A stretch of DNA of 64,000 nucleotides, taken from contig ADNK01002940.1 of NCBI GenBank assembly GCA_000320545.1, positions 1-64,000 on the forward strand, in the 5' to 3' direction. Positions 15,493-19,250 of the stretch are shown piece by piece. The translations under genes were made by a program, and so were the position numbers. Numbering within the stretch: position 1 is the first letter of the stretch; the number at the start of each line of letters is the position of its first letter. This stretch comes from Bigelowiella natans CCMP2755 (taxonomy: Eukaryota; Protista; Cercozoa). The notes beneath the pieces are model-generated. The model worked only from the letters and a program-made list of their open reading frames with translations, had not been told where the DNA came from and did not search any database.

Positions 15493-16395
15493 CCACAGCA
15501 CCGCTTGTTACATCAATATGATCAAGATAATAGCCAGAGAGTAGAACAACACATTAAACACACTAGGAAAATCAACCACGACTCATCACCACTTAACACA
15601 TTCTTGCCATCAAGGAGATATACTACTGCTACTACCACTGCTACTACTACTACATAACACAGACGCAATCTGATGGATACCTAAACACAGTGCTTCCAAT
15701 GGCAGGGGCGACGTTCATTACGCTGTAGAGTGATCCAAATGACTTAGACCCATACATTTCCATAACCTTGGGTTTGAGGATTAGGGTTATTAGTGTGTGT
15801 GTGTGTGTGTGTGAGTGTGTATTATCGTTTTGTGTTATTGTTATCGATCGTCGGGCTGAGTCATAGGCTAGCAATAGCATCATGATTAATCTTGCAGTAT
15901 GAGTAGCAGTCTCAATATGGATGATGTTGTTGTTGTTCTTCTACTACCAAACACGGATTGAGACACCAGAATGCGCCATCTATGTTGTGAAATTTACCAA
16001 AAATAAGTAAATGAGGGAGGGAGAGAGAGAGAGAGAGAGAGAGTACAGCAAGAGAACAATATGATGAAGAGAAGAGAAGTAAAAATTGGGGCAAGTATCA
16101 TTATTACGAGTGATTGCTCACAAGAAAAGCAACAGCTATGATGATGATGATACGGTGTGATGACTTGCTCTAATTAGCTCATCATTGTCCTCTTCCTCGT
16201 CGTCGTCGTCTTCTTCTTCTTCTTCTTCTTCTTCTACTGCTAGTTACTACTGGTACTACTTGGAGAACAACTACTACTCACATGCAAATCCACACAACAC
16301 ACATCCAAAGTAGATGCTAATACTGGACCCAAGAGCTGTGGCAATCTGTTATCGTTTGATGCATCATGCATCAACGCTAAGTGTTGGCATGTGTG

Positions 16396-16434
<39 letters not shown>

Positions 16435-17714
16435 TGATGATGGGATGTGATGAGCGTCATCACGTATGGTAAGGATCCCAAAACAACATTATTGACGACG
16501 CCAAACACTACCTACACCATTACATGTACATCTTTGTGATGAGGAGGATGATGATGATGATAAACAATTATCATAACAGCGTGCAGGTGGTCGTATGCGC
16601 TACTACTAATACTACGTACAAACATACCTGGCCGAGATTGTTCAGTGTCATTAATCCAGCACCCGTGCCGCAAAATTGAGCTAGATTAGGATGATAACGA
16701 TGATGGATCACGGCCATGAAAAAAAGGGGGGGGGAGGGTATGGAGAGGAGCATCAACATGTGCACGATAAATAGTAAGAACAACACAGCAGCAGCAGCAT
16801 ATAGCGCATCTATGTATACATATCTTTCTATCTATCATAGTCACGTTCTTCTTTTTGATAATACACTGATATTATTATTACTATTATTATTATTATACTA
16901 CTTCTTACCAGTGAACAATAAGTAGAAGTCTGCTGTCTGGATAGCTTCGCAGAACCCTGCCTCCCTCACAGATACTACTACGACGCCACCACCACCACCA
17001 CCAGAATGTCTTCTAGCGCTACCACTATATTCATAATCATCGTTGTTTCCTCCCCCTCCTGTAGTATCTTCTGCACGACTGCTCTCATATACGTCATCAC
17101 CAATCAAATCGTCGGTTCCTTTCATATCATCATGCCCCCCCAATGCAGCTTGCTCATAAGCACTAGACCTTGACGACGGGTGGAAGAGGAGGAGGGGGGG
17201 GGTGAGGACAAGAGAATATTTACAAATAAAGACTAACAAATTTCGTCGTGATTACAATAAATACACACTCCTCATTACTAACATCATGCTGCACGTACAA
17301 TGCATGCTGCTATTATTATTACTACTACTACTAGTAGTACTAGTACCTCTGATCTGAATCGTCACCAGAATCTGCAGAGAAATGTGCGAGCGACATGGTC
17401 ATAAGAGCGACGATAAAGAGCCCCGAGATACCCACAAATGATGCAGATTCCAAGCTTGTGTATCATATAGAAGAATAGAAGAAGAGGAGGGGGGGAGGTT
17501 GAATTCATGCGGGAGGATAGATATGTGATGATTTGATGATATTGACGATGATATTGCTATGTTGTTGTTGGTAACTAGACTATAAGTAAAGTAGTAGTAA
17601 CAAACCGATGATTTTGCAATGTAGCCTTTGCTTGCCAGCTGTTTTGAATGGCTCCTGCTACTGCCAGCGACACGCACAGTAACCCAACAAGCAAATACCC
17701 TCCCTATAAGTATA

Positions 17715-17791
<77 letters not shown>

Positions 17792-18326
17792 ATATGAATG
17801 ACGACGACGCAAAGTAATAAACCAACATATCGGTGAGTCAGTGAGATGAGAATGATGATGATGATGATGATGATGATAACGACGATGATGACGATAGACA
17901 ACATACCTCCCTCTACCTCCTACCCCCCCCCACCTCCCCCACCACCTTGATAAACTTTCGCTGTGGTTTCGAAATAGGCGTGCGACGATTTTGCGGAATG
18001 AGGTTGAGGAATGACGTTCCAATGGCGACTAGAGATCCGCATGTGATTGCAAAAAACCTACAACATCATCCATCATCATCATGATCATGATCATCATCAT
18101 GATCATCGTCGCCAACAAGAACAACAGCAGCAGATGTGTGGTGACTGTGTGTGGTGAATTCGATAGCATTATTTATTGGTACTACTGCTTTTATTGTAAT
18201 TGGTGTTGTTATTGTTGATGCTGTCTGTTACAGGAGAATCGGCACTCCATCATCTCCACCATTGGAGCTCTTCACAGGGCATGATGAGGACCCATTTTCT
18301 GGTGCAAACTACGCACAGCAGCGCAT

Positions 18327-18371
<45 letters not shown>

Positions 18372-19055
18372 AAGAGGAGGAGGAGGAGGAGGAAGAAGAG
18401 AAGAGTAAATAGTAGCCAGGACTCGGCTTAATATGAGTGATGCGTGGTTAGTTAATATTCATGCTTTTGCTCTTTGCTGATTTGTTGTAATTGTTGTTTG
18501 AAAAGATTGGCCAGGACTAAAACTTCCGCATAAGTCTTCTTCCCAAAAATTAATAAAGTAATAAACTATTAACACTCCGATTTAGACATCGTTGTCTATC
18601 ATCATTACTGTTTCTTCTTCTTCTTCTTCTTCTTCTTTTACTACCACAACTACTGCTGGTGCTGTTGCTGGTGCTATTACTACTAACATTATCATCATAC
18701 CGAGAATGCAATCGAGCCCATGGTGAAAGTCAACAAAGCAGCAGCATAAAACATAGGTCTGCTAATCACGGCCTTGAAACGGTCACTTAAAGAGCTGAGA
18801 GGAGGCACAAAAGTTGTTATTGTTGTTGTTGTTGATGATGATGATGATGATGTATTATTGATGAAGATGATGCTTTTGAGAGCCATGATGTGTATATTCT
18901 TACGTATTATCAAGGTATCAATATGGATCTTTGTCATCATCATCATCATCACCATCATCACATCATCTTTACATTAATCATATCATCATTGCTCTCATGC
19001 GACAGAATCCCCACCACGACACAACGACGACTAATATTATTACTACTTCTATTTT

Positions 19056-19090
<35 letters not shown>

Positions 19091-19250
19091 ATCGTCTTTG
19101 CTAAGTAATCAACCCACCCTGCGCAAATTCTCCCAGCACAATTGGCCACACCGAATATACTGACAAGTGTGGCCCCCAAAACGTTGGTTTTCTTTGCATC
19201 TCCACTAACGTAAAAAGACAGGTACACTTGTGCGAATATAGAACCTGTAA

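What the first reader, a model, noticed from the sequence alone, without database searches (positions are those of the whole stretch)
16282..19244. Internally scrambled MFS transporter gene: helix blocks swapped at in-frame short repeats inside exons
Seen: on the minus strand the spliced ORF reads ..SIFAQVYLSFYVSGD-AKKTNVLGATLVSIFGVANCAGRICAGSLSDRF..RPMFY..AFSFAPENGS-SSCPVKSSNGGD-DGVPILLFFA..DFYLLF..NNLGQIATALGS-SISIYFGCVLCGFAYG... Established: in Nodulin-like/Mch1 MFS proteins the LLF helix (TM6) and DFxLLF..NNLGQI (TM7) come before VSxxSxxNxxGR (TM8) and RP (TM9); here TM8-9 come first. Seen: GTGGAGATG occurs at 19197-19205 and 18251-18259, and TGGGTCC at 18288-18294 and 16325-16331. Each pair is in the same codon phase, giving the order A-P1-C-P2-X-P1-B-P2-D. 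Swapping B and C at these repeats gives A-P1-B-P2-X-P1-C-P2-D, a canonical transporter. All 18 exons splice in phase, so both orders are open. Inference, three options: (1) pointer-guided DNA or RNA unscrambling outside ciliates; (2) a fixed microhomology-mediated block interchange giving a rewired MFS fold; (3) an assembly artefact, though 7-9 bp repeats are far shorter than assembler overlaps. Exact breakpoints are uncertain; a simpler move of the YVSGD..AFS block also fits.
Basis: partly seen in the sequence, partly recalled or inferred. Interest (0 to 1): 0.9.

Follow-up and report, generated by a model that had tools for sequence, protein, structure and literature searches.

The report
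Transporter gene with relocated helix pair
A membrane transporter gene of the alga Bigelowiella natans really does encode its helices out of the usual order; the rearrangement is old, is transcribed as it stands and is shared with Lotharella, so it is a natural rewiring of a very common protein fold and not a scrambled gene awaiting repair.

Summary
Observation confirmed; interpretation partly supported. The window is Bigelowiella natans. The minus-strand 18-exon gene at 15060-20938 is the annotated Nodulin-like/NFD4-type MFS protein (JGI Bigna1 91004, 633 aa).

**The permutation.** The helix pair TM8-TM9, with its cytoplasmic A-motif, is encoded between TM5 and TM6. TM7 runs straight into TM10. 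All three junctions lie inside exons.

**Evidence that it is real:**
- Ten homologues from other organisms, and a distant paralogue in the same genome, keep the canonical order.
- BLAST and Pfam coordinates are out of order only for this protein.
- A 1724-nt spliced RNA contig, MMETSP transcripts and 14 DNA runs carry the permuted order. This rules out an assembly artefact and finds no unscrambled RNA or DNA.
- Lotharella oceanica and L. globosa orthologues are collinear with it. The hairpin is as conserved as the other helices, so the change is old and retained.

**The "pointer" repeats.** They exist as strings. However, such words are common in this coding sequence, and the Lotharella junctions share none. 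One copy sits in a loop that appears native to TM5-TM6. A simple hairpin move fits better than a four-break swap.

**Not shown.** Whether the hairpin still packs in the C-bundle is inferred only. The scan has one earlier first-reader note on this same stretch and none on other DNA.

The parts
15060..20938 (-). Whole gene, ATG to stop, 18 exons: 20938-20728, 20531-20435, 20108-19979, 19874-19785, 19594-19516, 19244-19118, 18794-18701, 18308-18232, 18057-17946, 17703-17606, 17454-17347, 17168-16909, 16680-16628, 16345-16282, 15979-15948, 15766-15681, 15428-15350, 15164-15060
   Evidence: GT-AG sites and phases. Codon-by-codon match to P0003/P0015. Splice joints in RNA contigs.
18288..19197 (-). 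Relocated block, residues about 219-283: TM8, cytoplasmic A-motif and TM9. It lies in the second part of exon 6, all of exon 7 and the first part of exon 8, with two introns inside.
   Evidence: Best match in each canonical homologue lies between its TM7 and TM10; E is 1e-8 to 5e-13 for P0004, P0022-P0024 and P0052, and weaker to non-significant (4.5e-6 to 0.66) for the other five. Pfam MFS_1 profile positions 239-290 of 347.
19198..19244 (-). First part of exon 6: end of TM5. The TM5|TM8 junction (19198|19197) lies inside this exon.
   Evidence: Nodulin-like profile match ends here, at position 155 of 250. An RNA contig piece covers 19118-19241 without a difference.
18246..18287 (-). Loop X, residues 284-297, with a conserved Cys. 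Probably the native TM5-TM6 loop. Holds the second copy of the 9-bp repeat (18251-18259).
   Evidence: Invariant S-S-C-P-V-K in the three permuted species. A single loop Cys also occurs in the canonical relatives that carry the triple-Cys TM11-12 loop.
17946..18245 (-). TM6: end of exon 8 and exon 9.
   Evidence: Matches TM6 of canonical homologues. Helix 299-316 has high pLDDT.
17347..17703 (-). Exons 10-11: two extra hydrophobic helices in the central loop, also present in canonical relatives.
   Evidence: Helices 332-364 and 368-400 in the model. Collinear with P0004 168-392.
16325..16945 (-). TM7: end of exon 12, exon 13 and the first part of exon 14.
   Evidence: Matches TM7 of all homologues: E 1e-9 to 1e-13 for the seven closer ones, 0.001 to 0.02 for three distant ones. 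NFD4_C profile start.
16282..16324 (-). Second part of exon 14: start of TM10. The TM7|TM10 junction (16325|16324) lies inside the exon, and the 7-bp repeat copy is at 16325-16331.
   Evidence: NFD4_C matches in two stretches with a profile gap, against one continuous stretch in the canonical P0004 and P0022.
15060..15979 (-). Exons 15-18: TM10 end, TM11, the Cys-rich TM11-12 loop and TM12.
   Evidence: joints 15979/16282 and 15766/15948.

Best explanation
**Shown.** This is an intact, transcribed Nodulin-like/NFD4-type MFS transporter gene of Bigelowiella natans. About 65 codons encoding the TM8-TM9 helical hairpin have moved from the C-terminal half into the start of the long extracellular TM5-TM6 loop. 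The encoded helix order is 1-2-3-4-5-8-9-6-(two central helices)-7-10-11-12. Bigelowiella and Lotharella share this order.

**Follows directly.**
- One origin before the two genera split is consistent with the tree.
- A hairpin has two membrane passes, so both its removal and its insertion keep every other helix in its normal orientation.

**Inferred, about 0.6.**
- The protein still folds as an MFS transporter, with the hairpin packing back into the C-bundle.
- The three new links are sterically easy. TM5 and TM8 are neighbours across the domain interface, and I take TM7 and TM10, both central C-bundle helices, to lie close together. The TM9-to-TM6 link has about 21 residues.

**Weakly inferred (route).** Duplication of the hairpin into the loop, then loss of the original. 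Both steps are in frame and neutral for topology.

The substrate is unknown.
For: **Identity.** The exon model equals Bigna1 91004 and the MMETSP transcripts.

**Out-of-order homology.**
- HSP order against P0004.
- Block table for 10 canonical and 2 Lotharella proteins.
- Pfam: Nodulin-like stops at profile position 155 of 250 in P0003 but runs 1-246 in P0004. NFD4_C is split in P0003 but continuous in P0004 and P0022. The hairpin hits MFS_1 positions 239-290.

**Same-genome control.** The paralogue on C352 has TM5-TM6 in one exon and TM7, TM8-TM9 in canonical order.

**Reads.** A 1724-nt spliced contig fits exons 1-14 in genomic order. Fourteen DNA runs of 12 studies hold at least 0.7 of the sampled words.

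**Age and constraint.**
- The Lotharella proteins are collinear at 51% identity.
- Hairpin identity is 57% against 51% for the whole protein, and 88% against 82% within Lotharella.
- The permuted proteins form one clade, support 100/100.

**Fold.** AF2 model pLDDT 70.4, pTM 0.74. OxlT 8hpk_A Z 28.7, rmsd 2.4, 323 residues aligned.

**Geometry.** TMH 5-8 is one of the two inter-domain contacts, and 8-10, 9-10 and 9-12 are static contacts (PMC4889909).
Against: - No transport or structural data exist.
- In the AF2 model the hairpin is the weakest membrane part: pLDDT is about 63 for residues 220-250 and under 50 for 251-266 and 278-289.
- The tools return no coordinates, so the hairpin's position could not be read.
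- The alignment given to AF2 misaligns canonical sequences at the hairpin.
- Only three species carry the form. No intermediate with two hairpins was found.
- No genomic DNA of Lotharella was available.
- Short tethers between the two bundles on the outer face might hinder the rocker-switch.
Confidence: 0.85

Rival explanations
1. Real permutation, but the protein does not work as a normal MFS transporter. The hairpin stays with the N-half or outside the bundles. The product would then be a new fold, a locked receptor-like protein, or a tolerated relic.
For: Low model confidence in the hairpin. The short TM5-TM8 and TM7-TM10 links could restrain domain movement. No functional data.
Against: The frame is intact and the protein is 51% identical across two genera. 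The hairpin and its A-motif are as conserved as the other helices. The gene is expressed. The rest of the model is a strong MFS match.
Confidence: 0.12
2. The change arose as the reader's four-break exchange of two blocks at 9-bp and 7-bp microhomologies, with segment X originally lying between TM7 and TM8.
For: Both repeat pairs exist, each in one codon phase. Two random 36-nt windows of this coding sequence share a 9-mer with probability 0.006.
Against: X carries the single Cys that canonical relatives have in their TM5-TM6 loop, together with a triple-Cys TM11-12 loop. The TM7-TM8 loops of the closest relatives with short loops (P0022, P0023, P0024) are matched without X. Repeated words are common here. 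The junctions were defined from the repeats. The Lotharella junctions share nothing longer than 6 nt. Exact third-position identity is unlikely to survive about 45% protein divergence.
Confidence: 0.08
3. Pointer-guided DNA or RNA unscrambling restores canonical order in the cell.
For: Only the two short repeat pairs.
Against: The spliced RNA contig and all MMETSP/JGI transcripts are in genomic order. No joint between the repeat copies appears in two DNA and two RNA runs. The orthologues are permuted as mature transcripts and lack the repeats.
Confidence: 0.01
4. Assembly artefact.
For: None was found. The contig is from a 3736-contig assembly with microsatellite-rich introns.
Against: All three junctions lie inside exons. 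They are covered by an RNA contig of another study, by MMETSP transcripts, by DNA contigs (X2 spans 18138-18319) and by two other species.
Confidence: 0.005

Closest known systems
Canonical Nodulin-like / NFD4-type MFS proteins (Pfam PF06813 + PF23262), e.g. P0004, P0022, Incisomonas marina P0024, plant P0005
   Same: Same family by Pfam score and by block-wise BLAST. Shared features are the two central-loop helices, the A-motif after TM8 and the Cys motif before TM12.
   Different: They encode TM1-12 in order. Here TM8-TM9 lies between TM5 and TM6.
OxlT, oxalate:formate antiporter (PDB 8hpk), the best structural match of the model
   Same: MFS fold: Z 28.7, rmsd 2.4, 323 of 390 residues aligned.
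   Different: 19% identity and sequential helix order. About two helices' worth of the chain stay unaligned, as expected if order differs. This does not locate the hairpin.
Madej and Kaback 'mix-and-match' hypothesis of reordered triple-helix units in MFS evolution (cited in PMC4889909, PMC8154325)
   Same: The idea that MFS helix units can change order in evolution.
   Different: That is an ancient, disputed inference from structure, concerning three-helix units. Here the moved unit is two helices, with plain sequence homology to canonical relatives.
Split lactose permease (Bibi and Kaback 1990, cited in PMC8154325) and the STP10 lid disulfide
   Same: These show that MFS folding does not need the native chain connectivity, and that a covalent outer-face link between the bundles is tolerated.
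   Different: One is a laboratory construct and the other a disulfide. Neither is a natural reordering of the chain.
Scrambled genes of ciliates with pointer repeats
   Same: Segments out of order, with short direct repeats nearby.
   Different: No unscrambled product, pointers not conserved, and the permuted form is the expressed protein.

Membership tests
Nodulin-like / NFD4 MFS family | PF06813 match over the curated cut-off in the N-terminal half | tested here: met
   P0003:50-216 scores 106.9 bits against a cut-off of 24.7, but only for profile positions 1-155 of 250. Window exon 2 scores 28.8 and exon 5 scores 24.7 bits. Genome search also hits.
Nodulin-like / NFD4 MFS family | PF23262 NFD4_C match in the C-terminal half | tested here: met
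   48.5 bits against a cut-off of 27, in two stretches with a profile gap. P0004 and P0022 match in one stretch, 14-213.
Nodulin-like / NFD4 MFS family | Collinear order of TM1 to TM12 along the chain | tested here: not met
   HSP order 4-169 / 414-462 / 168-392 / 456-589 against P0004. The hairpin lies before TM7 in 3 proteins and after it in 10.
MFS fold | Two six-helix bundles, by structural match to solved MFS transporters | tested here: inconclusive
   The model matches OxlT at Z 28.7 and many other MFS chains above Z 20. The position of the hairpin in the model could not be read, and its pLDDT is low.
MFS fold | A-motif in the cytoplasmic loop after TM8 | tested here: met
   The motif is present in the relocated block and aligned to that of P0004, 43% identity over 49 residues. 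For the motif see PMC8154325.
Pointer-guided scrambled gene (ciliate type) | An unscrambled DNA or RNA form exists | tested here: not met
   Only genomic order appears in RNA contigs, MMETSP transcripts and DNA runs. There are no matching joints. Contigs can hide rare forms.
Pointer-guided scrambled gene (ciliate type) | Matching pointers at each pair of junctions, kept in relatives | tested here: not met
   Present as strings in B. natans. The L. oceanica junctions share no word longer than 6 nt.
Pointer-guided scrambled gene (ciliate type) | Separate germline and somatic genomes | not testable with these tools
   Not known for chlorarachniophytes (my own knowledge). No data here.

The most novel reading that the evidence does not exclude
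This is a natural MFS transporter with interleaved domains. The C-bundle is built from non-contiguous chain segments, because TM8-TM9 is threaded out of the N-half and packs back against TM10 and TM12. The two bundles are therefore tied twice on the outer face and the protein still transports. That would show that chain order is not essential to the MFS fold or to the rocker-switch.
Probability: 0.5. Interest if true: 0.8.

Novelty: new variant of a known kind. Interest (0 to 1): 0.65.

Why it matters
The MFS is the largest family of secondary transporters, and its twelve helices are, as far as I know, always encoded in order. Reordering of helix units in its deep past has been proposed but is disputed.

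This is a recent and sequence-evident case. A two-helix unit has moved across the domain boundary, is kept by selection in at least two genera, and is expressed. Close canonical relatives are available for comparison.

It gives a natural test system for three questions:
- Does covalent helix order matter for membrane insertion and folding?
- Can the two bundles rock when tethered on the outer face?
- How do polytopic proteins evolve through topology-neutral hairpin moves?

I found no description of it in the held literature. That is not proof that none exists.

Tried and rejected
- **Typed peptides.** I redid it by coordinates.
- Its first exon boundaries were off by one or two bases. I corrected them by hand and confirmed them.
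- **Pfam on single exons.** Mostly blank; only exons 2 and 5 hit.
- **Exon-by-exon alignment to the C352 paralogue.** Too divergent to place the short helix exons; z is near 0 for exons 6-9. I read its order from its own exons instead.
- **P0004 against the own genome.** It found only the window gene, so no close canonical copy was seen there.
- **AF2 with five sequences.** Useless, pLDDT 31.7.
- **Sequential structure aligners.** They cannot tell where the hairpin sits, so one search shows only the fold.
- **Cluster members P0011-P0013.** These are unrelated 38-aa peptides. The hoped-for Lotharella genomic contig was not one.
- **Metagenome scan.** Found no relative.
- **Region search of the protein collection.** Found only the three permuted species.
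- **Read joints 17004/20671 and 17202/20673.** They have sides of only 20-21 nt and do not touch the repeats. I did not accept them as unscrambling.
- **Origin of the hairpin from TM2-TM3.** Rejected. The best match in each of the ten canonical homologues lies after its TM7; E is 1e-8 or better for five of them and 4.5e-6 to 0.66 for the rest.
- **Joined exon model.** It was never sent to a search tool. I used exon references and the database proteins P0003 and P0015 instead.

Full report
**What is there**

The window is eukaryotic, with short exons and introns full of microsatellites. On the minus strand I built an 18-exon GT-AG model from 20938 to 15060.

The joined model was not sent to any search tool. 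Searches used single exons by reference or database proteins that the tools returned. In scripts, exons were read in series only to check phase and to count repeated words.

Read codon by codon, the model gives 633 residues and a stop. It is identical to P0015 and differs from P0003 at one residue. P0015 is EukProt Bigelowiella natans P020342, the JGI model Bigna1 91004. P0003 is an MMETSP transcript. So the organism is the chlorarachniophyte B. natans, and the gene is already annotated.

**The order of helices**

Exon 6 runs from the end of TM5 straight into a helix with the family's TM8 signature. Exon 7 carries the A-motif loop and TM9. Exon 8 runs from the TM9 end through a short loop into TM6. 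Exon 14 joins the TM7 end to TM10. All three junctions are therefore inside exons and do not depend on splicing choices.

Three independent comparisons show that the order is unusual:

- **BLAST against a canonical relative.** P0003 against P0004 gives HSPs in the subject order 4-169, 414-462, 168-392, 456-589.
- **Hairpin used alone as query.** It finds its best match between TM7 and TM10 in ten homologues; E is 1e-8 to 5e-13 for the five closest and weaker for the rest. These include Incisomonas marina and a plant protein.
- **Pfam coordinates.** Nodulin-like covers profile positions 1-155 of 250 in P0003 but 1-246 in P0004. NFD4_C is split with a gap in P0003 but continuous in P0004 and P0022. 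The hairpin hits MFS_1 positions 239-290 of 347.

A distant paralogue in the same genome (contig C352) has TM5-TM6 in one exon, and TM7 followed by TM8-TM9.

**Real DNA and real RNA**

Fourteen DNA runs from 12 studies hold 0.70-0.87 of the sampled words. Six RNA-like runs hold about 0.3, which is the exon share of the stretch.

In run X15 a 1724-nt contig lies on the stretch in pieces. Its own coordinates fit exons 1 to 14 of my model exactly and in genomic order. Seven splice joints match my exon ends. A DNA contig of X2 spans exon 8 with its flanks. No joint connects the repeat copies in two DNA and two RNA runs.

This removes the assembly artefact. It also finds no unscrambled RNA or DNA in these runs, although contigs can hide rare forms.

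**Age and constraint**

A search of 1.84 billion representatives with exon 6 alone found one protein, P0001, matching the whole exon across the junction at 78% identity. It is from Lotharella oceanica. L. globosa has one too.

Both are collinear with the B. natans protein over its full length, at 51% identity by BLAST and 55% in alignment A1. The hairpin is as conserved as the other helix blocks: 57% against 51% overall, and 88% against 82% within Lotharella.

For a tree I gave every protein the same block order. The three permuted proteins form one clade (100/100) among canonical relatives whose branching is unresolved. One origin before the Bigelowiella-Lotharella split is the simplest reading.

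**The repeats**

However:

- The coding sequence has 31 repeated 9-mer pairs and 181 repeated 7-mer pairs.
- The L. oceanica transcript shares no word longer than 6 nt between its junction neighbourhoods.
- The residues at those places differ between the genera.

The canonical relatives with long TM5-TM6 loops also have a single Cys there. These same proteins have three Cys, not two, in the TM11-12 loop. P0004 and P0006 lack the loop Cys and lack the adjacent Cys pair of that motif.

I read X as the native TM5-TM6 loop, perhaps disulfide-linked to the TM11-12 loop. That reading is an inference. It favours a simple move of residues about 219-283 into the start of that loop. With the block put back after TM7, the flanks match the short TM7-TM8 loops of P0022, P0023 and P0024 without X.

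**How it probably works**

A hairpin crosses the membrane twice, so taking it out and putting it into an outer loop leaves every other helix with its normal orientation.

In solved MFS proteins, TMH 5-8 is one of the two inter-domain contacts. TMH 8-10, 9-10 and 9-12 are static contacts (PMC4889909). The short TM5-to-TM8 link therefore joins neighbours. The roughly 3-residue TM7-to-TM10 link joins two central helices of the same bundle, which I take to be neighbours; this rests on my own knowledge, not on a quoted passage. The TM9-to-TM6 link has about 21 residues (helix limits).

Split lactose permease and the STP10 lid disulfide show that chain connectivity can be changed, and that an outer-face tether is tolerated (PMC8154325).

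With 26 sequences AF2 gives pLDDT 70.4 and pTM 0.74. The model matches OxlT at Z 28.7 with 323 of 390 residues aligned. The hairpin is the least confident membrane part and its place could not be read. Packing into the C-bundle therefore remains an inference, at about 0.6.

The route is not resolved. The alternatives are duplication into the loop followed by loss of the original, or a single complex rearrangement.

**Comparison and novelty**

By Pfam the protein belongs to the Nodulin-like/NFD4 family, yet it fails the family's collinear order. It is not a ciliate-type scrambled gene.

I found no paper describing it or any natural permuted MFS in the held library. An earlier first-reader note of this scan on the same stretch says the same thing. 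A word search of this genome's notes found nothing else.

**Verdict**

This is a real, old, expressed hairpin relocation: a new variant of a known kind. The unscrambling reading is rejected.

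Noticed in passing
window 15000-21000: Most of the 17 introns of this gene carry a di- or trinucleotide microsatellite array of 9-23 copies. Eighteen TRF rows fall in 6 kb, and most lie in introns.
   Followed up: partly
window 16282 (exon 14 donor) and proteins P0016, P0018: Intron retention after exon 14 gives 535-aa truncated products ending two codons into the intron. The 1724-nt RNA contig of run X15 also ends exactly at the end of exon 14.
   Followed up: partly
window 19181-19183 (residue 224) and 20857-20871: Strain or allele differences. The window and the JGI model have Val at residue 224 where two MMETSP/JGI transcripts have Gly. P0019 has one more Glu in the GAG-repeat run of exon 1.
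   Followed up: no
G000:C352:20700-25100 (+), loci L003/L004: A second, very divergent Nodulin-like gene of B. natans with canonical helix order. TM5-TM6 lie in one exon and TM8-TM9 in one exon.
   Followed up: partly
window 18270-18287 and 15350-15390 (loop Cys and TM11-12 loop): A single Cys in the TM5-TM6 loop co-occurs with a third Cys in the TM11-12 loop across the close subfamily. Both are missing in P0004 and P0006. This may mark a disulfide between the two halves.
   Followed up: partly
window 17004/20671 and 17202/20673: Contigs of DNA and RNA-like runs join these places with only 20-21 nt on the shorter side, and seven other letters between for the first joint. They are probably other loci sharing low-complexity words. 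This is unexplained.
   Followed up: no
window 15511-15582: An alternative acceptor inside intron 16 would read a short hydrophobic tail and an early stop. It is not used in any transcript seen.
   Followed up: no
window 1-64000: No tRNA gene and no Rfam family at gathering score anywhere in the window.
   Followed up: yes
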